Assembly (NCBI GenBank): GCA_001179505.1
Contig: CDMY01000568.1
Coordinates: 1-50,515 of the forward strand
Length of the DNA: 50,515 nucleotides
From: Vitrella brassicaformis CCMP3155
Taxonomy: Eukaryota; Protista; Chromerida
Direction: 5' to 3'
Shown: positions 10,436 to 43,346 of the stretch, piece after piece
Numbering within the stretch: the first letter of the stretch is position 1
How the letters are laid out: every line of letters starts with the position of its first letter
Notes under the pieces: generated by a model
Database searches by the model: none
Told to the model about the DNA's origin: nothing
What the model saw: the letters and a program-made list of their open reading frames with translations, nothing else
Program-made: the position numbers and the translations under genes

Positions 10436-10493
10436 CTGCACAGTGCAAGGAAGGGCAGCGGACAGTTTCTGGTGCTGAGCCCTTTGTTTGTCG

Positions 10494-18008: not shown

Positions 18009-21000
18009 CTAAGCAGCCGCCTGGCCACCGCCCCCTTGGGCCCCTGCCGGTTGCTGGCCCGAACCCGTCTCGTTATCGCTGTCGTCGTCTATGACTATCG
18101 CTCGTGATGCATCGTCGGCCGGCGGGGGAGCGGCGGGAGCAGCTGCCGGTGGCTGTGGCTGAGCCGCGGCAGCAGCTGCTGGCTGTGGTGCCTGTGGCTG
18201 GCTGGCCGCGTCTGCGTCTTCTGCTTCTAGGTCGATCAAAGGGATGGGGCCGCCGACAGCCGGGGCGCTGGGGGGTCCTTGATTCTGCGCTTGTGCAGCT
18301 GCACCACCACCAGTCGCCCTCGCGCCTCCCTGATGGTTTGCCGATCCATGCCCAGCCGCAGCAGCAGCTGCTCCCGCAGCTGGGCATTGGTCGTCTCCTG
18401 CTTGGAAGGAGTTGCGTGGTCGCATGTGTCCGGTGATGCGGCACTCGCTGTCGCCCTCCTGCGGAGCCCGGATGTAGCGAAGCGTGCCGTCGTAGGCGAT
18501 CACATTGCCGCTCACTGACACGCCCCCCACCAAGTCGATGGCGTCCAGATGGCCCAGCCGACGGTCGTGCGCATCGTTGGCACCTACACACAGGCATGCA
18601 TCACAGACAGACACAGGTACATGGCTGGCTGCCTCTGTCGTCCCTCCCGTCTTGTCCATGAATGGGTGTGTGGTCGCTCACCGAGGTCGCATGAGACCCT
18701 CAGGTCGATCGGGGCAGGCGGCTCCACAGACACCAAACCACCTCCCCGGCCACGTCCCCTTCCTCCCCCCCTGCCCCTGATTCGGGGGCCTCGAACCACC
18801 ACTGATGGCCCCTGCACGCGATATGGCGCCGGGGGGGTGGACGAGGGAGACTCCGGCTCTCCCTGGCCGTTCTGCTGCTGCTGCTGCTGCTGTTGCTGCT
18901 GCTGTGGCATCGGGGTTTGGGGTAGCGGCGGTGGGGCTGGCGCGTTCGGCGCATTGTTGTTGTCGGGCGTCGGAGGTGGCTGTGGAGGCGAGTAGGCCTC
19001 GTCTGTGACTGGGGGTGTGTGAGCTGGCGACTCCTGTCGCCCTTGCTGCCCGTCTGTGTCGACCTGCATCGGTGTTGCCGGCTCAGGTGCCCCTCCATCT
19101 GCACCTTGTCGTGGCTGCATCTCTGCGTCATTGCCACGGGGAGGGGAGTTGCCGTCACCTGACCACACACACCACACCACACCACACACCAAGCGTCACT
19201 CACATCATGACATGACGTTGGCTGTGATTCATGTGTGGGCGTGGCATGGCATTCACGTACCTACCGGGTGGATGTGGCGGCGGGCCAGGGCCCGCAGGAG
19301 GCCCGTGCGGCCCCAGATACCCCGGGTACCCATAGCCGTAGGGATAGCCATAGGGTGGCGGGTAGCCGTATGGTGGAGGGGCGTGCGGGTATCCGTATGG
19401 GCTGTTGCCGGGTGGTGGGGGCGGCATGTATGGAGGTGGGTGGGGGTAGAGGACATACGGTGGGGGAGGGTGGGGGAAGGGGTGGGGGTATGGTGGAGGC
19501 CAAGACGGGGGCATGGCCGCAGCGGCAGCAGCGGCAGCCGGCTCGTCACGCTTTCTCTCCTCCTCCTTCTCGACGTCGCTCATCTCGTCGCCCCCCTCCG
19601 TCTTGCGCCGCTTCTCCCTTTCCTCCCTCTCGTCGTCTTGCTTGGACGGCTGAGACCTCTTCGGTGGTCGGTCGTCAACGTCGACAAGCCCACCTGAGCT
19701 GGGGGGAAGAGACGGCAGCCCCGCTGCAGCAGCAGCCGCGGCTGCCGCGGCAGCTTCTGGTTCGGCAACCCCAGCTGCCGGGGCGAACGTGCGATCGTGG
19801 TGCTCGGTGCCGATGGTGCCGCGACAGTTCTCCTCGCCGCAATCTGATGATGATGGATGGACGAGATGAAGGGAGACACAAGTCATGTGTGTGTGTGGTT
19901 CTGATTGCGTGTGTTTGGTGCAGTGCATTGGGTGTGTGCTGTGCTGTGCTGTGCCCTTACAGCAGGGGATGTCCGAGTACGCCAGGCCATAATCTGATTA
20001 TCGCCATGCACGACGAACAAACACACCAAGCCATGTGATGGCGGAGAAGGCTCTCTCTCTCTGTGTGTGTGTGTGTGTGTGTGTGGCGGGTACCTACCGA
20101 TCGTGATAGGGTCTCCGTGTGCGACCTCACGGATGGTCTGGAGGACGAGCGGCGCGTGGCCCTCGGTGCCGCGCCACAGCACCGACACCTGGCAGTTGGG
20201 CCGGCACGAATGGTTGACGAAACGCGACACGTTGCCGAACCACTGCACACACACACACACACACAGCCACAGTGGCAAGGGACAGAAAGCAATCACGTGA
20301 GCGAGACGATGGACAATGGACAATGCACAATAGCTGGTCGTCTCCCTGACTAACCTCACCGTGGCATCGATGTGTGGGTGGTCATCGGGAGAGTCCTCCT
20401 CTCTCCCACGCCTCAGCGGGCATCCTTGCTGCTGCTGCTGTGCGTTGTCATCGTCGTTGCCACCGTTGGCATGGTCGATGTCGTCATCGTCGTCGTCTCT
20501 CTCCCAGTACTCCATGATGTAGTTGTGCACGTCGCCGTGGCGCTTGGCCACCTCAGACCGCACATTGTTCTCGATGAGATTGATGCGCTCGCCGGCGTAA
20601 CACATCACCACACCGTGGGGCGGGATGGGCGGCACCGACTGATGACACACACACACACACAGAGGGAGAGGAGGAGGGGGAGGTGTGCATGTGACAAGTG
20701 TGTGTGTGTGTCGGGATGTCTGTGTGTGTGTGTGTGTGTGTGTGGTTGGGTGCTTACGAGCGAGTAGCACTCGAAGCCTCGCTCGTCCGTCCACCGCACA
20801 CCCATGGGATACCGCACACCATCCCTTGGAAACGTCCTAATCCGCCCACACACAAAACACACACAAACCGCTCACACAGAGTGACCACCATACCCACACC
20901 CACAGAGCGACTCCCCGTCCTGACCGACCTGTTAGTGCAGGTGCTGGCCAGGCAGCCGCACCGCTCCCCGCAGCAGTCGCCAGGGAAGGCGTGCTCGTCA

Positions 21001-22413
21001 CCGTCATAGCTGCCGAGGCAGTACCGCACCCCGTCCTTCTCCACTGCCCAGCACCGCACCACCTCCTTGTGCTTGATGCAGCCCGCGATCAGACGCCACC
21101 CGTTGTGCACCCTCATGTGGAGGTCAGAGGCGTCGTTGGCCATCCACCCGTCCACCGACGCGTCGATGTCGCTGCTGGCGCGGTGGTTGGCGAAAGCTGC
21201 TGGGGTGGCGAGCAGGGGCGTCTTGCTGCTGTCGAAATCCCGTGGGCGGCCCTGAGAGAGAGACAGGGAGAGACAGACAGAGAGAGAGAGAGAGAGAGGG
21301 CACGTGTGTGTGCCTGTGTTTGGTAGCAGGGTCAGCTTGCCATGGTTTGGATGATGCGGTAGTACTGTGCGATGACTCTGTTGATGTCGCCGCCTGGCGT
21401 GACGCCTCGCGCGTTGGGCGGCGGGTCGTTCTGGTGGTAGGTGTCCCTGATGTACTTGATGCGCAGCTGCAGGAGCGTCCGGGCGGCGTCGCGACCCTCC
21501 TCGGGGGCACACCCGCTGCAGATGCCTCGCAAATGGTCTGATCCGAGGGCGACAGAGAGGAGATGGATGGATCGGCGTGTTGGTGTGGTTTGTGTGTGCT
21601 GCGCACCGTTGTCGGTCATGCTCCAGGCCACCATGTGTTTGACGTAGCAGAAGTTGTAGGGCGAGTGGCGCATCGACCCACCACTGCCAGCAGCACCAGC
21701 CCCCATGTCAACTGACAACAAGAGCACCGACCGACACAAACAAACATGCATTCAGGCGTCTGGCGGCCTTCTCCTGTCGTGTGTGAATGTGCGGACTGAC
21801 CAGGGACGGGGAACGGCTCTTTGCCGCCCGACAGGTCTTTGGACGGATCAAACTCCCCCGCACGGTAAGGCGGGTCCAGCACGATACTCAACGTCACCCT
21901 GCACCACACCACACACCACACACAAACCACGCCACTGACAATCCCGCCACGCCATCGCTCTCTCTGCTTGGCGTACGTCCTCGGCTGCATGTCGCCGTTG
22001 CTGCCACCATTGTCGTTTCTAGCAGCAGCCGCCGCCCGTGGTGAGCTCTTGTTGCGGCCGTTGCCCCGGCGTCCCCTGGGCGGCCTGCCGCGGCCACGAT
22101 GGGTGCCGCTGTGGGGAGAGAAGGGGTCCGTGTGACGCGAGGGGGCGACGAAACGGAAGAACGGCATCGACAGGAAGTTGCGGGGAATCGACAGCAGCTG
22201 AGGGAGGGAGAATGGGACAGAGCAAGTAGGTTGTTGATCAAGGGGGGATGGTACTGCCTGCCTGCTGGTGTAGCTGTGCACACCACACCCACCCACCCAC
22301 CCACCTCTGTGCTTCCCGCGTTGTCGATCCGCAGCTGAAATGGCAGGAACTCGGGCGTGCCCTCATCAGACGACCAGGCCACGTTCTCCGCCACACACAA
22401 CTAAACACATCCA

Positions 22414-22447
<34 letters not shown>

Positions 22448-24561
22448 TCCCCCCGCACCTTCACACACCCCTCGCCCCCATCCCCCGTCCGTCCACACCT
22501 TATCGAGGTTCTCCATCACGTCAGCGAACGTGTCGAGTGGGTCGACCTCCAGCGACAGCCTGCGCGCGTAGCTGCCGGACCATGACGACTCGGTCTCGTC
22601 AAACTCGCCTTGGCTGCGACTGCGACTGCCGCCGGGGCCGCCGCTGCTGTTTTGCCGCTCGAGTGTGAGGGTAAGTGCGCCGGGGAGGTCCAGCGGGATC
22701 TCTCGCGTCATCTTGTTGGGCGAAGGTGGGCCGGGGCCATTGGTGGGGACCCGGGCCTTGCGCAAGTGCTTCAAATACCTGACGGACAGACACAGAGAGG
22801 CGTCACGTCACACACACAGCACAGCCCAGCGGTCTCTCGTGAACATGGGTCGTGTGTTGTGGTGTGGTGTGTTGTGTTGCCTTATCGAATCGACAGGCAA
22901 GGCATACCATACCAGTCTGGAATGTTGCTCTCCTCTATGTAAGAGAGGAAGCTCTCGTCCGGCGGCTCGGCCTCCTCGTTCTCGGGGATGCGGTAGCCGC
23001 CGTTGCTGTAGGGCTCCGACGGCGGCTCGTCCGAGAAGCGCAGGACGAAGTGCCAACACACCTTGCCGTGGCGGCAAGAGTAGTCGCGCCAGGCGTGCTC
23101 CACGAAGTACAAGCCGTCATACCGAAACCCATACGACGAACGATACCTAACACACATCACAAACACACACACAGACATCGAATGCACCGCACCCCTCCGT
23201 GTGGTGTGTTGTGGTGTGGTGTGACTCACTTGGAGTGCAGCGAGTGCTTTCGTATGACGCGGACGGGCTCGTGCTGCTCGTACATGGTCTGCAGGCCCTG
23301 CTCGGCGTCGGCGACGCCGTTGTCGGAGGGGCCGGGGACACACAAGAAGCGGACGCCCCGGTCCACACAATCGTTGGACACAACGATGGCCACGGCATAC
23401 TTGCCTGAATGAACCACACACACGCAGGCAGGCAGACAGGCAAACAGAGAGGCAGGGAGGGTGTCCATGTGGGTGAGTGTGTTGAGAGGATGACGTATTC
23501 ACCTTCATCGCCCCCCAGATAGACGCCATCTCGGTGTATGGTCTCCCAGTAGACCCGCCCCGACGCCTCGTCGACCTCATCCAACACACCGCCAAGCATG
23601 CGAAACGCACTCAACTCACCTGCACAACCACAACATCCAACACACGACACATGGCGGACGCATATACTGTGTTGTGCGCCGCGCCGCGCCGCTTTCCATG
23701 TCTGTCTGTCTCTGTCTGTGTGTGGTGGTCGGGTCGGGTCGCCTACCGACCTACCGTCGCGCAGAAAGTGGAATCCCGGTGTGATGGACTTGAGTGTGGG
23801 CGTGCCGAGCATGTCGTCGGCCGTCTGCCACAGCTCATACCCCGCGTTGTGCATCACCAGGGCACAGTCCTCGTCAGAGTCACGCTTCAGGCTGCCGCTA
23901 CTCAACACCTTGACCGTCTCCAACCTTACAAACACACACACACACACACACGCCATTGCACTGCTCGTGTCGTGTGTGGTTCTTCTCCCTCTCCCCCTCT
24001 CCTCTCCTCTCCTCTGTTCTGCATGTCATGTGTGGTGTGAACTCACCAGACTCGTCCGACGACCTGCAGCAGGTGTCCCGGCTTGCCCTGCCTCCCCGCC
24101 AGCCGCCGCACCTGGCGGAACACCGCCAGTGAGCAGGAGTGGGGCAGATCCTTGATACGCTGACGGGCCTCCCGCTCCTTCCTCTCAGCACGCGATGATG
24201 CCGCCGCCACGTCGCCACGCTGGGCACGAAACGACGCCAGCTGCCGGGCAGTCGGCCCTCCACGGGCCGTACCGCGACTGTCACTCCAAGGTGTTGGTGC
24301 TCTTGGGTTGGAGCTGGCTGACGCCCTCCCTCTTGTCCGGCCTCTCGGCGCTCGGTGCTCCCTGCTTCCGCTGGTGCTGCACTGGGAGGGGGCATCGGAT
24401 GAGGAATTGCTCCTCTGCTGGTCGGGTGGATCCATGTTCATGGAGCCAGACGGCAGATGCGGGGGATTGTGACCCTCCTGGGAACCCATGGCGCCTGTCT
24501 GCGGCTGGAGAATGGGGGATTTGGGTCGCTCCACTTTTTTTTTGAGCTCGCAGACGATCAT
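18009..24561 (-). CDS. SRA(YDG)-preSET-SET-postSET histone methyltransferase-like protein (SUVH-like, paralog E); start could be 24561 or 24490
   Basis: SRA motif GFRYDGLYFV (~23120); preSET start DLSGGKEPFPVP; CGCLASTCTNR; SET motifs IDAT..FGNVSRFVNHSCRPN and ITI|DYG; postSET IPC|YCGEENCRG; Pro/Gln/Ala-rich tail. Confidence 0.85.
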
Positions 24562-24790
24562 AGTGCTCCCTGAAACCGCTGCTGCACAGCGATAGTGGAG
24601 GCGATGTTGCCACAAGGAGGTCCGCACGGCCACGGCCTCGGAGCAGGAGCGAACGGCGGATCTTTCTGCCCGCCGTCCTCCCTTTGATCCACACGACCCT
24701 CACAGCTGCGGGGAGGTGTGACCAACCAAGCACTCATCGGCGGAGCGGCAGTGACTATGCTAGGGCGTCCCTCGTGTTGATAGGACGGCC
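24562..24790. promoter_or_regulatory. Putative ~230 bp bidirectional promoter between the two SRA-SET genes
   Basis: Inferred from divergent ATGs at 24561(-) and 24791(+). No motif was identified. Confidence 0.5.
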
Positions 24791-26034
24791 ATGGCGCTAG
24801 CCATGGCGGAAAGTTTGGACTGGGATGACGACCACGATGCCCATGACTACGATGACGCCAACCAGCCGGCAGCGGCACGTCAAGAGCACGTCCCATCGCC
24901 CTCCGGCTTCAACGGCACCGATGACGCTAGCGATCCCACCCCCTCCCTTGCGGATCAAGGCGACTCACCATCCTCTTTCCTCGGTGGCGGTGCCGCGCGC
25001 TACGGGGTCAGGCAGCGGCGGACAGCGAGGGGGGACAAGATGCTCGCTGCACCGTCTGAGCTCAGCAGCCAGATCGGTGCCAACGATCGGCCGAGGAGGA
25101 ACCCGTGCCGGTCGGGCGAGTTGCCGGCCGTTCCTGCTCCTGAAGTGTGTGACCTGATCACGTACAAGAATAGCTTCGGCCCTGACGGCGACAATGGCAC
25201 CACTGCGCTAGAGATCGTCAATCTGGGCCTCGTGACGCTCATGAACCAGCGCGCAAGCTTGGAGCAGTCGGTTTTGGCGCTCGAGAGGGGCGGACTCGTG
25301 CCGCCTGGGTTGGGCACCTACCCGTGTATCAGGCCTGGCGCTATGTTCTGGAACCGCCACCATCTGCGGCTCTGCGGCGTGCACAAGGACGTAACACACC
25401 CCATCGCAGTGGAGAAAGGTACGTGCAAGGCAAGCACACCGAGAGAGGAAGGTGGGGTGTGTCTTCATCTCGCCGGGCCGGGTCCATGTATTTGTGTGTG
25501 TGTGTGTGTTGTGTGTGTGTGTGTGGTGGCGTGGCCCACCTCAGGGAAGAAGACCACCGTGTGTGTGTCTGTGGTGTTGGAGGGCGACAACGTGACGGAC
25601 GACCGGGGCGACCGGTTCGTGTACGCCCTCCGACTTCCCCAAGTGAAGAAAGCTAACAAAGAGACAAGGCAACGGCTGTTGGTACGTTGATTGATCCATC
25701 CATCCATCCATCCAGGACAGCGCACTCCCTGTCTGTCTGTGTCGTGTAGTCCGTTCAGTCTACTGCGAGGCTGGCCCTCACGGCCGCATTGGACACAGAA
25801 CATCCGGTGGAAGTCTCCCGCAGCGCCATCGCAGAGTCGCCCTTCCGTCCACTGTGGGGCTGCAGATATGACGGTAGGGATGGGTGGATGGATGGCAGTC
25901 AGCGCGTCAGTATGTGTGTGTGTGTGTGTGTGTGGCTGATGGATTCAGGGCGTCACCTGGTGAAGGATGGATGGAGGGAGGAGACAGAAAGGGGGCATGT
26001 GTGGAAGTACGTGACGCTGAAACACACACAAACA

Positions 26035-26066
<32 letters not shown>

Positions 26067-27581
26067 CTCTCTGGATCGCATCGTTTGCCCTTCCCCCTTG
26101 TTCGTTCGTCGGCTCTTTCGTTCAGGTTCATCTTCAAGTCCGAGTCCCTCTTTGAGCCCACCGATCAGTCCCAACCGACGCCTTTCTACATGCCCCCCCG
26201 CCACGAAGCTCGCCGCTCCCGTGAGGTCTCGACAGACATCACCGTCGGGTCTGTGACCTTTCCCAGCCCCTTCAATCACTCGGACGAAATGAGGAAGTCT
26301 GCGACTAAGAAGGACCGCGCCGAGACGGCCGGCAGAGGGTGTGAGGTGGCTGTGGAGAGAGGTGCGTGGGGTGAGACCACCAGCAGCGTCTGGGTGCGGG
26401 ATATGGACACTTGCGAGGATGTGGAGCGGATGGTGGGTGGAAGACACACGAGCAAGGGCGGGAGGGAGGGAAGTGGCTGTGCTCGTTGCGTCCGTCATGT
26501 GTGGTGTGATTGATGTCTGGTGTTAACAGTTGATCCCTCGTGGTTTGCCGGTAGGGAGGGACAAGAACAGCCCCTTCTTCGACTTCCAGCTCAAAATCGC
26601 CACCGACACCGACACCCAAGTAGGTCACTCACTGACATCACACAAGTGACTGAGTGAGGGAAGTGATTGACACCGCCCGACGGACGGACGCTGTGCTGTG
26701 TGTGCGTATCCATCAACCCAACCAAACCAGGTCATCCCCCTGGCCAGAGCTGCTCTCAAGGACAAGCCCATCCAGCACATATTCCGCTCACGACCCGGCA
26801 AGCGCACATCCATCCTACTCCAGCCACCGTCAGTCACCACATGCACCCTCACACACACACACACACACACGCACGCACACAGTGAATGAATGACGTGTGT
26901 CTGTCTGTCTGTCTGTCGTCCTTCACGGCTGCAGGCCCGCCAACTTGTTCCACCTCCATAAGCCCATGGGCGAGCCCATTTGCGCCGACCTCGCTCTCGG
27001 CCGCGACAAGCACAAGATCGCTGTGTACAACTACGTTGATGACACTGGGCGGGACGCCAATGTCATCACCTTCTGCTACACCCGCGGGCAGATCGACACC
27101 GGCTTCCCCTACTCCCACCTCGTCAACTACGACGCCCCCTGCAGCGGCTGCGCCCCCCCATACGTCCGTGCCATCGCCGAGCGGCTGCTGGAGCAACAGG
27201 GCAGGCGCAATGAGATCAAGACCCTGGGCGCTTCCCGCGACAAGGTGCTCGGGCTGGCCGATGAGGCTGGGCAAGAGGGGAACGGGCCGAGTGGGCTTGA
27301 CGGCGAGTGGCAGCTGCTGGAGCCAGGAGGTCGGGCGGGAGTGGACGCGCCCAGGAAGTGCTTGGCCATCCAGAACAAGAAGACACGGCTCATCTACTGC
27401 CTGGGGTACACGCCGCCGGTGGACACCACAGACGTGGACAGCCGGAGTCACCACATGGGCAGCTGCAGTGACCACAATTGCCAATGCAGCCGCGAGTGTG
27501 AAAACAGGTGCGTGTGTCAGGGAGGGGCCGGACTATGGGTCGATGCACCAATGGGGCTGTGGATGACACAAACAAACACGC

Positions 27582-27618
<37 letters not shown>

Positions 27619-30600
27619 TGTGTCTTAGGGTGCGAATCGACGGCATCAGGTTTCCTCTCGCTATCCACAAGACAGAGCAGAAAGGCTGGGAGCTGCGGGC
27701 GGATGCGAGGATCCCAAAGGGCAAGCCGATCTGCGAGTACGGACACACAATACAACACAACACAAAACAGAGAGCCACGCGGCCAGACAGGTGTGACACA
27801 TGCGCGCTGTCTGTCTGTCTGTCTGTCTGTGGGTGTCTGGCTGACACTCAGGTACGCTGGTGTGCGCAAGACCCAGACCGAAGGCAACATCATGGCGGCT
27901 CGGGCGGATGACGACGAGACCAACTACATCTACAGCGTGTTCGACGAGCCCCATGACGACACAGACGTAAAAAAGAACACTTCGGGCACCACGGACGACG
28001 ACAGTCTAGAAGAGGAGAACCTCGACCCGTGCGTCGACTCCAGCATTGTCGGCAATGTTAGTCGCTTCATGGTACGTGATACACACCTGGGTCAGACGGT
28101 CAGGCGGCGCCGTGCCCTTACACACAAAGGGGAGGAGGGGGGCAGGGCAGGGCAGGGACTGACAGGCAGCTTAACCGACTGACTGTTTTGTCTCTCTGCG
28201 TGGGTTGGTTGGTGCAGAGCCACAGCTGTGTCCCTAACTGCCGGGTCGTCGCTAACTTCCCAAACGGCACTTGCTCGAGAGCCACGTGAGTGACGAATGA
28301 CTGAATGGACACACACACGTGCCGATCGATACCTATCACGAGTGGTGGTTGTGTTGTACTCGATATATCGATCACTCAGCGCGTGCGGGGCCTTCTTTCC
28401 GCAGCTGGTGGTCTTCCCCGTTCGTGACATCGAGCCTGGCCAGCCGATCACCATCGACTACACTGAGCGTACGTGAGATAGATAAAGAACCGACAGACAG
28501 ACAGACAGACACCCACACCACTCCCTCACGTCCCTCTCACTGTCTGTCCGTCTGTCTGCCCGTGTGTGTGTGTGTGCGCAGACTACGCGTACATCAAGTG
28601 CCACTGTGGGGAAGAGCTCTGCCGTGGGTACATCGGCGCGAAGCCGAACGACCACACCGACTCACCACAACGACGCCGACGGCAGGAGAAGCCAAGGCCG
28701 CACAATGACGATGACATGGCCCTGGCTCCCCTCCCCCATGCCGCTGCTGCAGCGGCAGCACAGCCGCCCCACTTCGAGCCAAATCCCTCTCCGACTCGGG
28801 AGGTGTCCGAGAGAATGGAGGAGACGGCCGGCAAGGCCACAAAGGACCCGGGCTGGTGGGCTGATGAGGTTAGCGACCCTGGGAGCAGCTCTGGGGAGAG
28901 CCAGGAGGACGGCGAGGGGAAAGATGCGGCAGAGCCGGCACCACCGCCACCACCACGACAGCAGCAGCAGCAGACCGAGCGTGCAGGGAAGGTGGCCGAC
29001 GACATGCAGCAAGAATCGGTCAGTGAGGCAGAAAGGCAGTCAGGCAAGACACTTAGGGCGTCAACCTGTGTCAAGTCAACCTGTGTTGGCTGTTTTCAGG
29101 CCTCACTCCTGCCTCCTGCTGCACCAGCAGCTGCTGCTGCACCTGCATCTGCATCCCTCGATGGCCCTGCTGGGGCTCTCCCGGCAGCAGCAGGAGAGCA
29201 GCTGCCGGCGGCGGTGGGAGATCAGCCGATGGAGGCCGACGGACAGGCCGAGAGGCAGGCCTCAGCAGATGGTGCACTGCCACAGGTATGACCAAGTCAG
29301 CCCAACCCGACAGAAACAACATTGTCACGTCTCTGTCTGATTTGTGCAGGTTTCTGCTGCTGCTGCTGCTGCTGTGTTGCCGACTTGTATGGAGCCATCT
29401 GCGCCCCCTTCGCCGCTCGGCAAGCGCAAGAGGGCCGCCGACGACGACGGCGAGGGAGAGGGAGAAGGGGATGATGCCGACGACGCCCACGCCCAGGTAC
29501 ACATGGACAGACCATGTTCTCACCACACAGCACATGTGCGACAAGCACACACATGCACGTACACGTTCGTCTTCATTCCTTGTCAGGCTGTGGCAGCACC
29601 AGCCGCTGCTGGGAGTGTGGGTGTTGCTGGTGGTGCCTCCATCAGCAGCGCGGCGCCATCAGTGCCCTCTGGGGGTGGGGACAGTCGCAGTTCATCGGTG
29701 CCCCAGCTGATGAGGATACGCAAGGTGGGGAGGAAGCGGCAGAAGACGGCTCAAGACGCCACCCAAGAGGCACCACAAGAGGCCCCCCAGGAGGCACCTG
29801 CTGATGGGGCTGCGGCTTTGGCAACTCAGCCAGCACACCACCCTGTGCTGCCGTGTGCGTCGGCTGCTGGCGGTCCACCTGCCATCGCGGTGACCAGCGA
29901 GGCAGCCGTCGAGCCAGCGGCTGAGGCGACTGCGAGTGCGAGTGCGCCTCCTGCCGAGTCGCAGCCGTCTGAGGCTGTCCCCAGGGAGGCGGACGCGGTC
30001 TTGCAACCGACTGCGGCCCCTGATGATGCCTTAGTCCGGTGGCACACGACTGGTGAGCGCCTGTCGGTCCCTCTCCCACTGCCCGCCTCGCCGCCACACA
30101 GCCGTGCCTCTCGTCGAGGAGGAGTCCGTCGACCCCCACCTACATCACCACTACCACCACCACGACTGCCGCGAGTAGGTGACCCTGTCGGTGTGCCACC
30201 TCACGACACGGCCGGCGGACTGTTCGTCGATGGCCCTCGCCGGGCCTTGATGAGCGATGTGCCCCCTCCCTCACTCTCACCACCATTCCCACCCCGGGAG
30301 GTGATGCCGCTGCTCCCTTTGCTGCCGCCCACGGCCAGGCCTATGTGCATGGAGCCTCGCCCTCGCCCGAATCATCATCCGGCCCCTCGTCCGCAATTCT
30401 ATCGCATCCATCCATCCCCGTGGATGAGCGACAGGTCCATGGCGCTCCCCCCTCTGGAGGCCGGCTTCAGCGCTGAGGAGGGACACCGAGAGAGGCGGAG
30501 CAGCCAGGGCCCCAGGTCAGCTGCAGAGCCTGCTGGTGGTGCTGGTAGCGCTGGTGGTGCCGAGGACCGCATGAGTGGGGACCGGTCGTCAATGGCCGTT

Positions 30601-33600
30601 GCCCACGGTTTCCGCTACAGGGAGGGCATCAAATTGAAAATGGGTCAGATTGGCCGCGCAAGGTTGATGGAGCTGGTGCGCAATTACCGCGGCACCCACA
30701 AGGCCGACACGGACGACATCTTGCGGCAGAATGGCCTTCACCAGCTGGAGCTTCGCAGCGCATCCATTAAGCAGCTGCTCAAGTGCGCACATCTATTCGG
30801 GCTGTGGGATGCGGCGGTGCAGATCCACATCGAATATCAGCAGCAGCAGCAGCAGCAGCGCAGACGGGAGGTGGAGGTGGTCAGGGCAGCTGAGGAGGAC
30901 CGTCTTCTCCGGCTGTCCTCCCAACTGCCCACCTTGCCCACACAGCAGCAGCACCCACGCCCCCTCCAGGACGACGACAACACTGACGGCTCTTCGGCAC
31001 CGCGTCGGAGGGGGCGGAGCCGATTCGACTCGCGCTTCCATCGACCCGGTCCTTCGCCGCAATCGATGTCAGATCAGCTTCGCACCGAAGACATGGATGC
31101 GGAGGAGGGGCTGTGGATGCTTAGGGGGTGGCCCCACCAACCCTACACCACCAACTCGTCTGCTGCGGCCCCAACCAGCGGGGAGGCACGCGTCGAGAAG
31201 TGTGCCGACCAGCTGCAGGACCAGCGCGGCAACGGCAGTGGTGACGCCAGCCACAACACCGACTCACAGGCGGGCGCACTGGTGGTCGACGGCTCGGGAG
31301 GTCAAATCGAAGCCGCACCTGCAGCAGACGGCTCGACCGAGCCAATGCAACAAGATGGCGACACCAGCGAGCACTTCGACACACGTGCATCGGTGCCGGC
31401 CGCTGCTGCTGCTGGTGGTGGAGGTGGTGGGCTGATATTGGGGCTGAAGAGGGCTGATAGGGATGAGGAGGATCGCAGCGTGGCGCCGCGGGCACGGGAG
31501 GGTGTGGGTGGGGCCGGTGGCATGATCCGCTCGGACGGATCGGGATCGCCCATGGAGCTCTGTCGGGGTGCCGAGTCTGATGGTGAGGGGGGGAGGGAGC
31601 GTCCACTGAAGCGGCAGAAGTCCATCAAGGACGAGGGTGGGGAGCACCTGCAGGTGAGTGAGGTGCACACACAACAGTACTGACTGCACTGCACAATGAT
31701 GGCTGGCGCAGATCAGATGGTCACTCACTCCTTGCTTGGTATTCTGTCATTAATTACTCAGGAGCACGCGGTGCACGTTGCACCAGCAGAGGAGCAGCCA
31801 AGCCAGCCTGCCACGGACATGGTCGACAACGCCATGACGTCTGAGCCACCTGCACACCCGGCAGGTGCTGCGGCTCCCCCTGCCGAGCTCTCCACCAGCA
31901 GCCGAATGGAGCCACCACCGGCCGTGGTCGGCGAAGCTGAGGCGCCGGCTTTCGTCACGGAGGCCGACGCAGCAGCACTGCCGCCACCGGCAGAACCAGA
32001 CCAGCATGACGACTTGAGCAACGGCGAGCTGCTCCCGCCTGTGGATGGCCATGGCGATGGGGAGATGGATGTGGATGTGCCCCCACAGGTCGAGTACTAC
32101 TTAAAATTTGCCCACTTGGATCCTCTGGAGTTATGGGACGGGGTGTCTGTGTCGCCTGCTGCTCTCCGCCGACAGGTCCATGCACACATGGCGGATGATG
32201 CTGTAGCTGCTCCGCCAGCGGCTGCAGCTGAGGGCGACGGTCATTTCTCCCTACCCTCTAGACCATCCCCACCACCCCCACCACCCCCCTTGGAGCCACT
32301 CATGGCTCAAGATGCCACTCAAGACGCCATCCAGGAGGCACCTGCTGATGGTGCTGCGGCTTCGGCAAGTCAACCAGCACACCACCCTGTGCTGCCGTGT
32401 GCGTCGGCTGCTGGCGGTCCACCTGCCATGGCGGTGACCAGCGAGGCAGCCGTCGAGCCAGCAGCTGGGGCGACTGCAAGTGCGGGTGCAGACGCGGATC
32501 GCGCCATTGACCTGGATGCGGCTCAGACCGCGGTCTCGTTCGCTGCGCCACGACCATCTGCGCCAGCTGCACCAGCTGCTGCTGCGGCTGCTGCTGCTGC
32601 TGCTGCCCCAGCCTTGCGGTTGGGTGTGAGTCCCAAGCCAAAGCCGCTCATCAGTCCCGGCAGCGATGCCGAGATGGCGCAGCCCCACCAGCAGCAGGGC
32701 CTCCTGGCCGTCCCGTACTCGCCGCAGGCGCACCCACTTGTGCCAGCTGGCGGGCAGCAGGGAGCAGGTTTTGGTGGAGGTGGTATCGGCGGGGCTGGGC
32801 AGGGCGAGCGTGACGTTAGCATGAGCCCGCGAGGCGGCCGTGGTCGCCGTGAGAACGGTGAGGTGTTGATGGCGGACCGCGTTGATGGGCGAGCGTTGGT
32901 GTTAGCGGACAAGACCCCCGTCGCCATGTGAGCAGGGAGGCTGGGTGGGTGGGTGGAGGGGCAAAAGGGACGCGATGCCTCCATCTATCCATCGATACGA
33001 TTGTGTTTGTCTGTGCACTGCAGGCCGGGGCTCGGTGCGGCCCCTGCAGCAGCTGCAGCCATCGTACCCAAGCACCCATCGCACCAGCAGAAGCAGCGTG
33101 GCGAGCCAGCCAACGGCGGGCACTCCGGCGGGCCCCCCCGCGGCGGCGGGCGTGTCAGCCCTCACATCAAGAAGAAGCAGGATCGCCAGCAGCAGCAGCA
33201 GCAGCAGCAACAATTGCGTGAGGAGTTCGGTGACGGGCCCATCTGCATTGACTTGCTGGACGAGTCGGACGAAGACGCATCCCCGCCGGCCGCAGCGGCA
33301 GCTTCACCACCAGCAGCAGCAGCAGCACGGGGTGCAGAGGTGATGGACCTGAGCCATGACGACGACGACCCGCCGGATGCACCACCACCACCACCGCCAC
33401 CACAGCCACCAGCACGACCGATCGTCGCGGAAGATGAGGACGATGACTGTGCGATCACTGGAGTGGCGGCGGCTCCTGACTGTGAGATCACTGGAGTGGC
33501 GACGGCTCCGGGAGCTGCAGCCGCCGCCGCCCAGCAGCCCATGTCGATGCCCCTCCGGAGCAGGGAAGAAATGGCAGAGAGGGCGAAGGAGCTCAAGGAC

Positions 33601-33648
33601 TTTTTGGATTGTGACGAGGGGATGGATGGGGGGGATGGGGGGCTATAA
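24791..33648 (+). CDS. SRA(YDG)-preSET-SET-postSET histone methyltransferase-like protein (SUVH-like, paralog F) with a very long low-complexity C-terminus
   Basis: SRA-like motifs PGAMFWNRHHLRLCGVH, VSVVLEGDNVTDDRGDRFVY and GCRYDG; preSET DLALGRDKHKIAVYN...CQCSRECENR; SET KGWELRA..ICEY|AG, VDSSIVGNVSRFM|SHSCVPN and RDIEPGQPITIDY; postSET KCHCGEELCRGYIG. Exons splice in frame to TAA at 33648. Confidence 0.85.
29749..32484 (+). repeat. Intragenic direct duplication of about 180-195 bp (29749-29943 and 32305-32484) in gene F
   Basis: Both copies encode AQDATQ..QEAPADGAAA..QPAHHPVLPCASAAGGPPA.AVTSEAAVEPAA.ATASA. Confidence 0.9.
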
Positions 33649-34914: not shown

Positions 34915-35573
34915 TCACGCCTTTTGTCTGGTGACGTGAGTGTACCATGGCTCGTCGTGCGGCATGACCCCCAGGTTTATCGCCATGATCTCCTCCTCTG
35001 TCAGCGGCTTGGACTTGTAATTGCTCGGCAAATCGCTCCAGTCACTATACCTGATCCAGTTGACACGCACACGCACACACCACAGAACGGCCGGTTTCCG
35101 TTGTGTCCTCTACCTTCTGTGTGTTCCTTCCTTGCTCACCTTTCCACATCGATCCCCGGCTTGCTGCCCCTCGTCGATGCCGCTGCTGACGATGCCCCGC
35201 TGGCCGCCTCCCTCGGTGAGGGGGCCGGTGTGGGCCTCCCCTCTCCCCTCATCCCACCGGCCTTGCGGTCAGGGAACCGAATCAGCGGCGTATAGCGCCG
35301 TGCTGCATTATGTGTCGTTTGCTCGGGGGTGCTGCTGGTGTTGGTGTTGTGTCGCGGTGGTGCTTGTTGTGCGGATGTAGAGGATGAGGCGGGTGGTTGT
35401 GCCTTGTCTGCTGGTTGGTCGGCGAGTTGGTCGGCGAAGGATGTGTCGATAGTGCACAGATCACCGCCGATGTACACGGTGCCGCCTGCATGCACCACAA
35501 ACAAGGCCACGAAAGAGATGATATGTGTGCTGGCAAAACGGATATTAGAGAGCGTGCGGCCATGTGTGTGGCG

Positions 35574-35608
<35 letters not shown>

Positions 35609-36212
35609 GTCCAACTAACTCACCGACTTCGGCCGCGTGGCCGGTGATCTTGCCCGAGGCCTCGGCGTGAATGTCAACAGACACCTGCACACACACACAC
35701 ATATGAATAGTGAAGGCACGCAATGCACACGACACCACCGCATGAGTCTGCCCTTCCGTAATTACCTTGTCGGTGTCGATGACGCAGATAACTTCATCCT
35801 CCTTGACCAGAGTGCCCACGTCCTTCTTCCACTCGGCCACCGTGCCCTCGGTGATGGAGTCACCCATATTCGGCACCTGACAAACAACACACACACACAG
35901 ACAGAGAACACAGACACAGACACAACCAAACGACACCAATCACATCCATCTCTCCTTGCCCCACCCGACAGCCCAGTCCATAGGCTCGTGCTGGCTCACC
36001 TTCATCAGCACAGATGACTCGGCGGCCTCACTGAAATGCCGGCAAAACACCCGCTGCCCACTCGCCACCTCTGACGCCGCCCTCTGGAGAGCTCCTGAGT
36101 GAGGTGTGTGTGTCCGTCTCGTCAGCAGGGCGGTGCTGAGGCGCAGCATGCTCGATGACACGGGCCACTTTGTGCACACGAGGGCGCCAGAAAGTCGACG
36201 GAAGGCCAGCAT
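34915..36212 (-). CDS. Mitochondrial lipoyl-domain + KGD4/MRPS36-like protein (2-oxoglutarate dehydrogenase adaptor); exons 36212-36000, 35876-35766, 35684-35624, 35485-35140, 35050-~34915
   Basis: Arg/Ser-rich presequence; lipoyl domain [21 protein letters not shown]...IDTDK|VSVDI; then [11 protein letters not shown] and [22 protein letters not shown], which match the two conserved KGD4/MRPS36 motifs. There is no acyltransferase domain. The exact 3' end is uncertain. Confidence 0.8.
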
Positions 36213-36553: not shown

Positions 36554-39500
36554 TCATCCCTGCAGAGCAGAAAGAGACGTCCGAGCGAAAGAAACACGTT
36601 CAAGACACTGTGTGCCGTCCACTGCCCTGCCCTTGGTGCACATCCATCCGATGCACCCTCCCATGCCGCTGCAGGCTGATCTATACACACCACACCACAC
36701 CAACCGTGAGAAACCGTCAACACATACACACATGCACTTGTAGCTAGCTACCCGACAGCAGCACCAGCACCAGCAGCTGCCATCTCCTGTTTCTCCTGCT
36801 TCTTTTGCTTTTTGGCGGCGGCGGCCTTCCCCCGGGTGGTGCCCCTGTTGCCGCTCTTGCCCTCTAGGTAACACGCCACGATCTTCTTGACATACGTGGC
36901 GCACTTGCCCTGACAATGAGCGGACAGACACAAACACAATGCCGGTCTGTCTAGTCATTTTGTGACACCGCACCTGCAGGTCTGTCGGGTCAGTCCACTT
37001 GGACGGCACAGGCGATGCGTCAGCCAGCAACGAGATGGTCGCATCTGTTAAGATACATACAACACATCCATCGGATGGATGGCCCTCCCTCTCTGTGTGA
37101 GCATCCATTGGTACCCGTGCTGGAAGTGCCGCCGCCGCTGTGTCCTGTGGCCATGGTGTCGATGCGGTAGACGTGCAGGTGATGCGTGACGTGGCTGAAC
37201 ACATGAGTCACCTCACCCACCTGAATGCCTCGACAACACGTGGCACACAGCCATGGATCGGGAGAGACACAGAGGTTTGGCTTATCTGCCCGGCTCTCAT
37301 CTCGGTACCTTGGGAGCAGCAGACGAGTCGTCACACGCAACGCCCATCTCCTCTAAGGCCGCCCGGAGCTTCTGCGGCACAACACGCACACACAGACACA
37401 GGGAGAGAGAGAGGGAGAGAGAGGGATATGCGACACACGCCGACACACACCTCCCACACACATGGAACTCCAGTCAGACGGGCAGGCCATGTGTGTGTCG
37501 TGGGTATGGCAGAGAGTCAGAGCGATAAGGGATGAGTGTTTGTGTGTATCCTCACTGGACACTCAGAGAGGTTCTTACAAGACAAAGCGAATCATCACGC
37601 TGCCTGCCATGACCACCCCAACCACACACCACCTCACTGACCTGTACACACTCCTGGTCGCTCACAGCGGCATCCCCACTGCCCTTCTTCCGCTTTTTGT
37701 CACCCTTCTTCCCCTTGCCGCTGCTGCTGTTCTCTATCAGCACGCTGGGCGGCTCCCACTGGTTGGCCAGCAGCCCCTTGCTGGCCCGCTGCCGCACCAG
37801 GATGTGCCCGTCTGACGGCCGCTCGACGATCGCCACGGCGTAGGTCTCCTCCTTGCGGGGAGCCGTGCTCTTCTGAAAGAGGGAGGGATGAGCACATAGT
37901 GTGCACATGGGTCATGGATGGGATGCGCACACGCGTGTTTGTGTTTCTTGTGCTTCTCACTCACCGGCAATGGGTACTCGCCAGCTGAGACAGGGCCGTC
38001 CACACGCTGCGATCCAGACAGACAGACAGACAGACAGGACGAAAAAGATAGATCGACCATACGGGGACGGAGCTCTCCATAGCTCTCTGGCTGAGGTCGT
38101 GCTTACGGCTGGGTCGCACACGTCACATTCGCTGGGGTTGTGTCCCTTCCGGCGCACTGTGCGGTCCCTCACCTCCCGCTGTACTCGACAGTGCGCCGAT
38201 ACTGACACAACACAGACACACAGACACATGCATGTGAGAGCCGTGTTTGGTGAATGAAGGTTTTCTGACTTCCTACTCGGACAGACGGAGCATGCAGGGT
38301 TCTTGGGCGTGCAGACGGTCGCCCCAAGCTCCATCAGAGCCTGCACACACAGGACAGACACACACACATCACAACCAACCGTATCTATACCTCCTGCAAT
38401 CACCCAGAAGCGCACCTGATTGAGATCCCCTGGAGATTGCACTTCGTCCCCCTCTTGGCTTTTGACCAGCTCCCGCGCCACATTGGTGCTCGCCGCCAGC
38501 AGGTTCCTCGCGCTCGCAGGGGCGGCGTAGGCAGCCAGTCGGCTCGCCACGCGCACCACATTGCCGTCAACCGCCGGAGTGGGCACCGAGTAGCTGCACA
38601 AAACGGTTGAAACGTATGTGGCGTGTACTGCATGTGGTTGGTGTCTGTCTGTTGGCTCGTAGGCTTACGCGATGGATAAAATGGCGCCTGCGGTGTATGG
38701 GCCGATGCCGGGAATGGAGCGGAGGGACTTCTCGTCACTCGGGATCACACCACCATAATCCTGTACACCGCGGACACAACAGCACAGCACACCACCACCA
38801 AGTGGACACAGACATGCACACACGTACCCTTCCCTGTGTTATGGATCTCGCTCACCCTCATGACCTTCTTGGCCCCCTCGAGCAGGTTCTTGGCCCTGCT
38901 GTAGTACCCCAGTCCCGCCCACACCTCATTCACTTCCTCCAGCGTGGCACCACTCAGCGCCTCGGCGGTCGGCCAGCGCCCCATCCACTTGAGCCAGTAC
39001 TCAATCACCGTGGCCACCTGCGTCTGCTGCAGCATCACCTCAGACACCCATACGCCGTACGCCGACACGCTCGCAGAGACGTTGGTTGGCGCAGAGGGAG
39101 AGGGAGAGGAGTTCGGGGGAGGGGCAGGGTCAGGGGCGGGTGGTGCCTGCCTCTGCTTGAAGAACTGTTGGATGGTGGGCTGGCTCTTGTCGGACTTCTG
39201 GCGGGTGACGGTGCGATGGCCATAGGGAGGCGGGTCACCCCTGAATGCAGTTAACGACAGCGAGAGGATGCAGCAGCAGCGCACGGCGCTTTCATCTATT
39301 GTCTCTGTCTGTCTTTTATGTGAGCATATACCTACCTCCACGGCAGGTGCCTTCGGTTCGCCCTGAACCAGTCCAGCAAGCCTTTCCGAATGCCCTCCCT
39401 GTCCGCCCTACCCAGGTGGTGGTAGCCACCTCTCGTCGACTGATCTCCATCTTCATCGCCAACGTCTTGATGCTGCTGGTGTCGCTGGTGCTGCTGCTGC

Positions 39501-39661
39501 TGCATGGTGTCCAAGTCTTCTATGTCGATGATCTCCGTCATGCTGCTGGACGAGCGCTCCGGCAAAGGACGGATGAGCCGAAGGCGCGGAGGGGCGAGGG
39601 CAAAACCAAGAGCTAAGGAAGGAGCAATGAATAAGAAGCCATGGAGAGCAACCAGGCGCAT
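36554..39661 (-). CDS. MUTYH: A/G-specific adenine DNA glycosylase; 3' end approximate; alternative start at 39541
   Basis: [47 protein letters not shown], HhH motif [25 protein letters not shown], Fe-S motif [12 protein letters not shown]|ISAHC, and Nudix-like [11 protein letters not shown] and THVFSH. Confidence 0.93.
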
Positions 39662-39693
39662 CAACGTGGCGCGGCGCCTCTGTCGGGTTCGGT

Positions 39694-43279: not shown

Positions 43280-43346
43280 CCCCCCCCCCCCCCGCCGCCC
43301 GCCCCCGCATCTCGCCGGTATGGCTGTCTGGCTGATCAGCTATCTA

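What the first reader, a model, noticed from the sequence alone, without database searches (positions are those of the whole stretch)
18009..33648. Head-to-head pair of plant-SUVH-like SRA-SET genes in a non-plant (alveolate-like) genome
Seen: two large genes with the same order SRA(YDG)-preSET-SET-postSET diverge from a ~230 bp interval. They are highly diverged but share private motifs (F.FQL.I, CSGCAP, YCLG). Established: SRA-SET fusion is the hallmark of plant SUVH/KYP proteins that couple 5mC reading to H3K9 methylation, whereas animal and fungal SUV39/Clr4 use a chromodomain. Inference: an old, co-regulated and possibly heterodimeric reader-writer pair, i.e. an undescribed DNA-modification-directed chromatin system. 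This is the best candidate system in the window.
Basis: partly seen in the sequence, partly recalled or inferred. Interest (0 to 1): 0.85.

Follow-up and report, generated by a model that had tools for sequence, protein, structure and literature searches.

The report
Back-to-back SRA-SET chromatin gene pair
Two neighbouring, oppositely oriented, expressed genes of what is probably the chromerid alga Vitrella each join an SRA domain (a reader of marked DNA bases) to a SET domain (a histone methylase), a design that papers describe only in green plants; which mark they read, and whether both are active enzymes, is untested.

Summary
Two intron-rich genes diverge from 24489/24791: minus CDS 24489-18009 (about 1497 aa) and plus CDS 24791-33648 (about 2394 aa).

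For the plus gene, one spliced RNA contig carries the SRA, SET and postSET exons in a single open frame. The exon lengths fit that contig exactly. For the minus gene, the RNA contig lengths and the 31-mer share (0.53 seen, 0.531 expected) fit my model.

The two are old paralogs: 28% identity over preSET-SET (E 3e-28), 21% over SRA (E 3e-7), and at least four shared intron positions. Their transcript contigs start no more than about 55 bp apart.

Caveats:
- The SRA Pfam hits stay below threshold exon by exon.
- Pfam Pre-SET is not detected, although nine Cys are conserved between the copies.
- Both copies have G[W/F]E in place of GWG.
- The plus copy has SHSC in place of NHSC, so it may be a weak or dead enzyme.
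- Three homolog searches on these genes found nothing.

Reading of 5mC, H3K9 writing and heterodimer formation are untested. The taxon label (Vitrella brassicaformis) comes from earlier scan notes, not from my own tests. The scan has already flagged three more SRA-SET loci in this genome, so this is one family.

I found no paper describing SRA-SET proteins outside green plants. Verdict: real, a new variant of a known kind, moderately interesting.

The parts
24490..24790 (.). Divergent promoter and 5'UTR interval between the two start codons. RNA contigs of the minus gene reach 24514 and those of the plus gene begin at 24569, leaving about 55 bp that includes a T9 tract. The plus 5'UTR holds two short upstream ORFs, at 24604 and 24757.
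24791..33648 (+). Plus gene CDS, about 2394 aa. Exons confirmed by RNA contig lengths: 24791-25418, 25545-25681, 25750-25873, 25949-26006, 26126-26432, 26530-26619, 26731-26828, 26935-27507, 27629-27736, 27852-28071, 28218-28285, 28380-28468, 28582-29018, 29100-29285. After that, 29350 onward is model only: 29350-31653, 31762-32894, 33024-33648.
25334..26144 (+). Plus SRA (YDG) domain, aa 182-322, spread over five exons. YDG lies at aa 295.
   Evidence: Pfam SAD_SRA E 0.0025, profile 3-68; colinear with the minus SRA at E 3e-7; shared phase-1 intron
26530..26619 (+). Plus 'F.FQL.I' exon, 30 aa, with phase-0 introns on both sides. It corresponds to minus exon 22400-22305.
27065..27629 (+). Plus preSET-like Cys region, aa 525-672. 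It holds CSGCAP, YCLG and C.x4.C.C.x3.C.NR. Nine Cys align with the minus copy. No family recognises the stretch.
27630..28467 (+). Plus SET domain, aa 673-833, in four exons. Motifs: KGWELRA, ICEYAGV, RFM-SHSC (Asn replaced by Ser), ITIDY.
28593..28637 (+). Plus postSET motif CHCGEELCRG.
28638..33648 (+). Plus low-complexity tail of about 1540 aa, rich in Ala, Pro and Gly, with no Pfam family. It holds an internal 182-nt repeat (29764-29945 and 32308-32489) and acidic SIM-like motifs at 33241-33276 and 33337-33369.
18009..24489 (-). Minus gene CDS, about 1497 aa. Model exons: 24489-24047, 23924-23755, 23619-23503, 23404-23230, 23146-22913, 22778-22499, 22400-22305, 22197-21977, 21898-21801, 21711-21607, 21537-21377, 21251-20929, 20836-20758, 20638-20360, 20242-20098, 19993-19961, 19843-19265, 19158-18818, 18721-18682, 18583-18009.
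   Evidence: Gene finder trained on the plus introns. The first intron is confirmed by RNA. The 31-mer share in RNA runs is 0.53 against 0.531 expected.
23029..23782 (-). Minus SRA (YDG) domain, aa 196-341. YDG lies at aa 311.
   Evidence: Pfam SAD_SRA E 0.03 and 3.4e-4; solved UHRF2, UHRF1 and SUVH5 SRA domains at E 2e-5 to 3e-3; Atlas score 0.91
20836..21658 (-). Minus preSET-like Cys region, aa 630-808, with CSGCAP, YCLG and CC.x3.C.C.x4.C.NR.
19986..20835 (-). Minus SET domain, aa 809-978. Motifs: RGFECYS, VMCYAGE, RFVNHSCRPNC (intact), ITIDY. An acidic insert sits in the SET-I region.
   Evidence: Pfam SET 38.4 bits, E 1.7e-9; hits to solved SET domains
19809..19970 (-). Minus postSET motif CYCGEENCRG, split by an intron.
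18009..19808 (-). Minus low-complexity tail, rich in Pro, Ala and Gly, with PY-rich and poly-Q runs. Acidic SIM-like motifs lie at 18242-18210 and 18101-18069.

Best explanation
Shown:
- The locus holds two expressed, divergently transcribed paralogous genes.
- Each encodes, on one polypeptide, an N-terminal SRA/YDG domain, a short conserved F.FQL.I element, a Cys-rich preSET-like region, a SUV39-type SET domain and a postSET motif.
- Each then continues into a long disordered tail of 500 to 1500 residues.
- They arose by an old inverted tandem duplication of a gene that was already fused and already had many exons.
- They now share a very short bidirectional promoter.

Inferred:
- They act as chromatin proteins whose SRA domain docks on DNA, probably by flipping out a modified or otherwise special base.
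- That docking brings a histone-lysine methyltransferase module to the site, as plant SUVH proteins do when they couple 5mC to H3K9 methylation.
- The minus copy keeps NHSC, the catalytic Tyr and postSET, so it is the likelier active enzyme.
- The plus copy has Ser in place of the SAM-binding Asn (SHSC), so it is likelier a weakened or non-catalytic reader or adaptor, like Arabidopsis SUVH2 and SUVH9.
- The acidic SIM-like motifs at both C-termini may tie the proteins to SUMOylated chromatin factors.
For: Single transcript, plus gene:
- A 3765-nt RNA contig (run X4) and a 1351-nt contig from an independent study (run X5) lie on the SRA, preSET, SET and postSET exons.
- Every gap between the listed pieces is filled exactly by GT-AG exons that keep one 1041-aa open frame.

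Minus gene:
- RNA contigs of 3384 and 3882 nt start at the 5' end and are spliced at the first intron.
- The RNA runs hold 0.53 of the 31-mers of 19961-23619. My model predicts 0.531; without the doubtful exon 22197-21977 it predicts 0.478.

Domains:
- Pfam and solved-structure hits, and the Atlas placement, are given under the observation check.

Paralogy and age:
- blastp gives E 3e-28 and 3e-7, colinear.
- Intron position and phase are shared in the SRA Gly codon, on both sides of the F.FQL exon, and at the NR junction.

A possible DNA-methylation partner:
- A published survey lists a DNMT4-like protein (CEM15752) and DNMT2 for Vitrella brassicaformis (PMC10538959 supplement).
- An earlier scan note reports a further orphan C5-methyltransferase gene.
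Against: - No SRA hit reaches Pfam's gathering score (best 20.8 bits against 30.7). I could only test single exons.
- The N-terminal half of the plus SRA has no hit among solved structures.
- Pfam Pre-SET is not detected. The Cys spacing is non-canonical.
- Both copies replace the second Gly of the GWG SAM-binding turn with Glu. The plus copy also has Asn replaced by Ser in NHSC.
- By my own eye alignment to UHRF1, recalled from memory, at least one of the two pocket tyrosines is missing in each copy. 5mC reading is therefore doubtful.
- The published survey found no DNMT1, UHRF1 or HELLS in Vitrella and gives no 5mC status.
- No homolog from any other organism was retrieved, so there is no conservation evidence.
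- Heterodimer formation, substrate and DNA ligand are all untested.
Confidence: 0.55

Rival explanations
1. Both proteins are non-catalytic pseudo-enzymes. They would serve as reader or scaffold proteins that keep a SET fold only as a binding module, as Arabidopsis SUVH2 and SUVH9 do.
For: Both copies carry G[W/F]E in place of the near-universal GWG turn, and the plus copy has SHSC in place of NHSC. The exon-level Pfam SET hits of the plus copy are weak. An earlier scan note reports another SRA-SET gene in this genome with an apparently dead SET.
Against: The minus copy keeps RFVNHSCRPNC, the ITIDY tyrosine and a complete postSET. Its SET scores above Pfam's cut-off. Both copies keep the nine preSET Cys and the postSET Cys, which suggests selection on the zinc sites of an enzyme-like fold.
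Confidence: 0.2
2. The SRA domains do not read 5-methylcytosine. They would recognise another flipped base or DNA feature, for example a hydroxymethylated pyrimidine, a hemi-modified site of another kind, or a lesion. The system would then share the SUVH design but not its signal.
For: By my unverified eye alignment, the SRA pocket and the 'YTG.GG' loop are poorly conserved. Exon-level SRA scores are low, and there are blanks against solved SRA domains for the N-terminal halves. The published survey lists no DNMT1 or UHRF1 for Vitrella, and its 5mC status is unrecorded.
Against: The YDG half is clearly SRA-like, and its closest solved relatives are 5mC and 5hmC readers. A DNMT4-like gene and an orphan C5-methyltransferase gene are reported for this genome.
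Confidence: 0.2
3. They are ordinary members of the plant SUVH family that reached the chromerid lineage by endosymbiotic or horizontal gene transfer from a green or other alga and then diverged quickly. They would not be an independent fusion.
For: The domain order is the same as in SUVH, including postSET. Chlorophytes already have SRA-preSET-SET proteins (PMC5725981; Chlamydomonas SET3p, PMC1807958). Chromerids carry many genes of algal origin; I state this from general knowledge.
Against: The preSET-like exon has no detectable relative among 1.84 billion representative proteins, and Pfam Pre-SET does not hit. I could build no tree, so this is simply untested.
Confidence: 0.3
4. The architecture is an artefact of gene modelling: the SRA and SET parts are separate genes, or one copy is a pseudogene.
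For: The minus gene model downstream of 23753 rests on my own gene finder, not on laid reads. The tails beyond 29400 (plus) and beyond about 19400 (minus) are model only.
Against: The spliced plus contig spans SRA to postSET with an uninterrupted frame. Introns are 68-146 nt, which leaves no room for a promoter or terminator. Minus contig lengths and 31-mer share fit one transcript. Neither model has a stop or a frameshift.
Confidence: 0.03

Closest known systems
Plant SUVH4/KYP, SUVH5 and SUVH6 (SRA-preSET-SET-postSET H3K9 methyltransferases)
   Same: Same order of modules on one polypeptide. The YDG half resembles the solved SUVH5 SRA. SUV39-type junction C.NR, EY.G, (N/S)HSC..PNC, DY and postSET C.CG...C are present.
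   Different: The preSET has non-canonical Cys spacing and escapes Pfam. GWG is replaced by G[W/F]E. The SRA-to-preSET linker is 150-330 aa and holds a private F.FQL.I exon. Disordered tails run to 500-1500 aa. The source is reportedly an alveolate, not a plant. Orthology is untested.
Arabidopsis SUVH2 and SUVH9 (SRA-SET proteins without detectable methyltransferase activity that recruit Pol V; PMC3898904, PMC2582956)
   Same: An SRA reader joined to a SET module whose cofactor pocket is impaired. This is a possible model for the plus copy (SHSC).
   Different: From memory, SUVH9 lacks postSET. Both copies here keep it. No RdDM-type partner is known here.
Chlamydomonas SET3p and chlorophyte SRA-(preSET)-SET proteins (PMC1807958, PMC5725981)
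   Same: Unicellular algal SRA-SET proteins. They show that the fusion predates land plants.
   Different: Those belong to Viridiplantae. This genome is reported to be a chromerid. Sequence similarity was not testable here.
UHRF1, UHRF2 and plant ORTH/VIM (SRA plus RING)
   Same: They give the best solved-structure matches to the minus YDG exon, at E 2e-5.
   Different: The output module is a ubiquitin ligase, not SET. A published survey found no UHRF1 in Vitrella.
SETDB1 (MBD plus preSET-SET-postSET), including the bdelloid 4mC-preferring variants (PMC8885841)
   Same: Same logic of 'read DNA, write histone', joining a methyl-DNA reader to a KMT1-type SET.
   Different: The SET is bifurcated, and the lineage is animal.
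G9a/GLP (EHMT2/EHMT1) paralog heterodimer
   Same: Two diverged KMT1 paralogs that work as a pair; I cite this from knowledge. It is a possible analogy for the head-to-head pair.
   Different: There is no evidence of interaction here. G9a and GLP are not adjacent genes and use ankyrin repeats as reader.

Membership tests
SUVH (plant SRA-SET H3K9 methyltransferases) | SRA domain N-terminal to SET on the same polypeptide | tested here: met
   Plus gene: one spliced RNA contig and one open frame cover both domains. Minus gene: contig lengths and 31-mer share fit one transcript.
SUVH | SAD_SRA (PF02182) recognised above Pfam's gathering score | tested here: inconclusive
   Only single exons could be submitted. 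The best scores are 20.8 bits (minus) and 18.0 bits (plus) against 30.7, in the correct order along the profile. The minus YDG exon hits solved SRA domains at E 2e-5.
SUVH | 5mC pocket: two stacking Tyr, one Asp and the YTG.GG loop | tested here: inconclusive
   I have only an eye alignment against UHRF1 recalled from memory. It suggests that one Tyr is missing in each copy and that the Gly-rich loop is lost. No tool gave an alignment (searches were blank).
SUVH / SUV39 (KMT1) | Pre-SET (PF05033), nine Cys forming a Zn3 cluster | tested here: inconclusive
   No Pfam Pre-SET hit. Nine Cys are conserved between the two copies, but with unusual spacing.
SUVH / SUV39 (KMT1) | SET (PF00856) with GWG, EY.GE, NHSC..PN and catalytic DY | tested here: inconclusive
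   Minus: SET 38.4 bits; NHSC, EY-type and DY motifs are present, but GFE stands for GWG. Plus: only fragment hits; GWE and SHSC (Asn replaced by Ser), DY present.
SUVH / SUV39 (KMT1) | postSET C.C.x4.C | tested here: met
   CHCGEELC (plus) and CYCGEENC (minus), by motif only.
SUVH | Placement inside the Viridiplantae SUVH clade in SET and SRA trees | not tested
   No relatives could be fetched, so no tree was built.
SUVH | H3K9 methyltransferase activity and binding of methylated DNA | not testable with these tools
   This needs biochemistry.
Bidirectionally transcribed paralog pair | Divergent orientation, short shared upstream region, both expressed | tested here: met
   The ATGs lie at 24489 (minus) and 24791 (plus). 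RNA contig ends lie at 24514 and 24569. Both genes appear in runs X4 and X5.

The most novel reading that the evidence does not exclude
Chromerid algae evolved, independently of plants or from a very old common stock, their own family of SRA-SET 'read DNA, write histone' proteins. This head-to-head pair would work as an obligate heterodimer of one catalytic subunit (minus) and one regulatory subunit (plus). Its altered SRA pocket would read a base modification other than canonical 5mC. That would be a second, mechanistically distinct coupling of DNA marks to histone methylation in eukaryotes.
Probability: 0.1. Interest if true: 0.85.

Novelty: new variant of a known kind. Interest (0 to 1): 0.55.

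Why it matters
The fusion of a base-flipping DNA reader (SRA) to an H3K9-type SET enzyme is the textbook device by which plants lock DNA methylation and heterochromatin together. Papers call it plant-specific or trace it to green algae.

An expressed, duplicated and strongly diverged SRA-SET family in a free-living relative of malaria parasites and dinoflagellates bears on two questions. It makes testable whether this coupling is older or more widespread than thought, was transferred from an alga, or was invented twice. It also gives concrete candidates for how a little-studied alveolate with orphan DNA methyltransferases organises silent chromatin.

The natural pairing of a canonical NHSC copy with an SHSC copy under one promoter is a ready-made test case for the evolution of active and inactive enzyme pairs.

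Tried and rejected
Homolog searches
- An exhaustive HMMER search of the plus preSET exon (26936-27538) against 1.84 billion representative proteins gave zero hits, not even the gene's own product. The genome's own proteins therefore seem absent from that library, and the region is an orphan.
- Word-indexed searches with the minus SET piece and the minus YDG piece scored nothing. The length filter also bars full-length relatives.
- I spent the last such search on the neighbouring MutY-type gene, hoping for a taxonomic signal. Its hits are animals, plants and bacteria alike, so it told me nothing.

Solved structures
- Short SRA N-half exons and the plus read-through piece gave no hits.
- One query (20758-21251) wrongly included an intron. 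It produced a spurious summed match to designed Kelch repeats, with every single stretch non-significant. I rejected it.

ESM Atlas
- The plus preSET exon and the plus SRA read-through piece were not recognised.

Other look-ups
- An exact-sequence look-up of ORF 31696-32928 found nothing on record.
- Pfam finds no family in the tails or N-termini.

Steps I left out
No fold test of the SRA was possible.
- No phylogeny was possible.

Literature
- Seven full-text searches found no paper on SRA-SET proteins outside Viridiplantae.
- The chromerid genome paper does not mention chromatin, histones, SET or SRA at all.

Rejected reading
- 'KYVTLK' after the YDG exon is not coding. RNA lengths show that the exon ends at 26006 and resumes at 26126, reading ...WK|FIFK.


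Full report
**What is in the sequence.** The window has about 58% G+C, rising to 60-67% across the finding. It is full of short open frames separated by (CA)n- and (GGAT)n-rich stretches, which is the look of a eukaryotic genome with many short introns. On the minus strand between 24489 and 18009, and on the plus strand between 24791 and 33648, the frames carry the same succession of motifs. The order is YDG, then F.FQL.I, then CSGCAP, then YCLG, then a C.C...C.NR cluster, then (N/S)HSC, then IDY, then C.CG...C.

**Gene model of the plus gene, from RNA.**
- Two of the public runs that hold this DNA (X4, from 2015, and X5, from 2013 and another study) hold only about 0.6 of its 31-mers, as RNA would. 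Runs X1 to X3 hold 0.97-0.99, as DNA would.
- I laid the runs on 23401-29400. X4 gives one 3765-nt contig with pieces at 24569-25416, 26126-26431, 26935-27508, 27852-28070, 28582-29017 and 29099-29287, and 418 nt more beyond that. X5 gives a 1351-nt contig with the same joints.
- The letters missing between the listed pieces number 321, 189, 107 and 158. Each gap is filled exactly by small GT-AG exons that keep the frame open, and the best-consensus solution is unique in every case.
- The result is 14 exons and 1041 codons without a stop, running from the ATG at 24791 through SRA, preSET, SET and postSET to 29285. The frame then continues at 29350.
- Introns are 68-146 nt with GT(A/G)(C/A)G donors.
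- A model to the stop at 33648 gives about 2394 aa. Beyond 29400 this is prediction only.
- The refuting condition 'SRA and SET exons lie on separate transcripts' is therefore not met for this gene.

**Gene model of the minus gene.**
- Read laying allowed one call of 6 kb, so only the 5' end of this gene was laid. Contigs of 3384 nt (X4) and 3882 nt (X5) reach 24476 and 24514 and are spliced across 24046-23925. Their remaining 2.8-3.4 kb lies to the left of the laid stretch.
- I trained a small exon-chain finder on the plus gene's codons and 13 introns. It recovers the RNA-supported first intron and gives 17 exons to the end of postSET, plus three tail exons to the stop at 18009, about 1497 aa in all.
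- As a check on this model, the RNA runs X4 and X5 hold 0.53 of the sampled 31-mers of 19961-23619. The model predicts 0.531. Dropping the least certain exon (22197-21977) would give 0.478.
- For the plus stretch the same calculation gives 0.611, against 0.60 and 0.58 observed.

**Domains.**
- Only contiguous references can be submitted to the tools, so all tests are exon by exon.
- Minus SRA: SAD_SRA hits cover profile positions 78-106 (E 0.03) and 110-143 (E 3.4e-4). Minus SET scores 38.4 bits (E 1.7e-9), above the cut-off.
- The 77-aa minus YDG exon matches the solved SRA domains of UHRF2 (E 2e-5), SUVH5 (2e-3) and UHRF1 (3e-3), with the RYDGLY...W...G...W.F.LR register intact. Its nearest ESM Atlas clusters are SAD/SRA families, at score 0.91 with 211 shared features.
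- Plus gene: SAD_SRA covers profile 3-68 at E 0.0025 (read through an in-frame intron), and SET fragments score E 0.0026-0.036.
- The plus SRA call therefore leans on its homology to the minus copy.
- Pfam Pre-SET hits neither gene. The 190-aa plus preSET exon has no relative among 1.84 billion representative proteins and is not recognised by the Atlas. Even so, nine Cys are aligned between the two copies: FCY, CSGC, one Cys 12 residues before YCLG, YCLG itself, and C.x4.C.C.x3-4.C.NR. A zinc cluster with unusual spacing therefore remains possible.
- No Pfam family is found in the N-termini or in the tails.

**Relationship of the two genes.**
- blastp aligns them colinearly: 28% identity over 402 aa from preSET to postSET (E 3e-28), and 21% over 336 aa across SRA and linker (E 3e-7).
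- In a global alignment, at least four introns share both position and phase. These are the phase-1 intron in a Gly codon of the SRA, the two phase-0 introns around the 30-32-aa F.FQL.I exon, and the phase-2 intron at C.NR.
- The ancestor was thus already a multi-exon SRA-SET gene, and the pair is an old inverted tandem duplicate.
- The start codons are 301 bp apart. The RNA contigs of the two genes end at 24514 and 24569, leaving about 55 bp that includes a T9 tract.
- Both genes are present in both RNA data sets. That shows that both are expressed, not that they are co-regulated.

**Catalytic motifs.**
- The minus copy has RGFECYS, VMCYAGE, RFVNHSCRPNC, ITIDY and CYCGEENCRG.
- The plus copy has KGWELRA, ICEYAGV, RFM|SHSCVPNC, ITIDY and CHCGEELCRG.
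- No run shows any other letter across the laid stretch (table 3), so the Ser codon is not a window-specific error.
- From established knowledge of SET enzymes, the GWG turn and the Asn-His of NHSC line the SAM pocket, and I recall that changes to the Asn abolish activity in DIM-5. This is recollection, not a test made here.
- My reading is that the minus copy is plausibly active and the plus copy impaired.
- This partly agrees with the earlier scan note s1-194575, which says both paralogs have altered SAM-binding motifs. The GWG change is shared, but NHSC is altered only in the plus copy.

**SRA pocket.** I could obtain no tool alignment of the N-terminal SRA halves. By eye, against my memory of UHRF1, the plus copy keeps the G.MF..R......GVH segment well. 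In both copies, however, the 'GGY.DD.D.G....YTG.GG' segment is altered: the first stacking Tyr is absent and the Gly-rich loop is lost. This makes 5mC reading uncertain. I give it only as a lead.

**Tails.**
- Both proteins continue into Ala-, Pro- and Gly-rich tails.
- Near each C-terminus lie hydrophobic-then-acidic motifs of the SUMO-interaction type: ICIDLLDESDED and EVMDLSHDDDD in the plus copy, PLIDLEAEDAD and AIVIDDDSDNE in the minus copy.
- The plus tail holds a 182-nt internal repeat, 91% identical.

**Context and comparison with what is known.**
- Earlier notes of this scan name the genome Vitrella brassicaformis; 182 notes do so. They list three more SRA-SET loci on other pieces: one with a RING tail and frame breaks, one with an apparently dead SET, and one with a Tudor/Agenet-like module. 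They also list an orphan C5-methyltransferase gene.
- I did not test the taxon myself. My one attempt, through a neighbouring MutY-type gene, was uninformative.
- Short introns, G+C content and the 2013-2015 RNA and DNA runs are compatible with that genome project.
- If the label holds, the papers I could search are silent on these genes. The chromerid genome paper does not mention chromatin, histones, SET or SRA.
- A survey of Archaeplastida SET proteins places the first SRA-SET in Chlorophyta (PMC5725981), and plant papers call SUVH plant-specific.
- A 180-species survey lists a DNMT4-like protein (CEM15752) and DNMT2 for Vitrella. It lists no DNMT1, DNMT3, DNMT5, UHRF1 or HELLS, and records no 5mC status (PMC10538959 supplement).

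**Verdict.**
- The interpretation 'SUVH-like reader-writer genes outside plants, old pair under one promoter' is supported as anatomy.
- 'DNA-modification-directed', 'H3K9' and 'heterodimer' remain hypotheses. The altered SAM and SRA pockets are reasons for caution.
- This is one pair in a family that the scan has met several times in this genome.
- I rate it a new variant of a known kind, with moderate interest (0.55).

Noticed in passing
window 29764-29945 and 32308-32489: A 182-nt direct repeat, 91% identical and 2544 nt apart, lies inside the plus gene's tail. It encodes the same segment of about 60 aa twice, so it is either an internal duplication or an assembly effect.
   Followed up: partly
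window 33241-33276, 33337-33369 (+); 18242-18210, 18101-18069 (-); also ORF 43350-43931 (-): SUMO-interaction-like motifs (a hydrophobic core followed by an acidic or Ser run, such as ICIDLLDESDED and AIVIDDDSDNE) lie near the C-termini of both SRA-SET proteins. An unrelated open frame at 43350-43931 ends with similar EVIDLT and IVIDDD motifs.
   Followed up: no
window 24604-24687 and 24757-24780: The 222-nt 5'UTR of the plus gene holds two upstream ORFs, of 27 and 7 codons, ahead of the main ATG.
   Followed up: no
window about 37960-40006 (-): A MutY/MUTYH-type adenine DNA glycosylase gene lies here (HhH-GPD, 57.8 bits, with LPWR and VDGNV motifs). Its nearest database proteins are 62-80% identical fragments from many lineages.
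   Followed up: partly
window 35139-35939 (-): An exon with a lipoyl/biotinyl domain (Biotin_lipoyl, E 2e-9).
   Followed up: no
window 48780-49577 (-): A MORN-repeat protein gene (PF02493, E 1.9e-21), followed by a coiled-coil-like exon.
   Followed up: no
window 2883-4968 (+) and 8239-10501 (-): Two long, similar open frames lie in inverted orientation and share strings such as IQKCL.DRGC.KS and HWLLLN.YATFKALAS. This looks like another inverted paralog pair with no Pfam family. It may belong to the F-box/LRR family noted elsewhere in this genome (s1-197158).
   Followed up: no
window about 43000-43400 and 45500-45950: Runs of N (assembly gaps) show up as X runs in translation and as dips in G+C.
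   Followed up: no
window 20929-21100 (-) and 27280-27400 (+): The stretch before YCLG in both copies resembles a single Kelch blade (W..l......v....g.iY..G.ydg). It gave an inflated summed hit to designed Kelch proteins, which I judged to be chance, or the normal preSET hairpin.
   Followed up: partly
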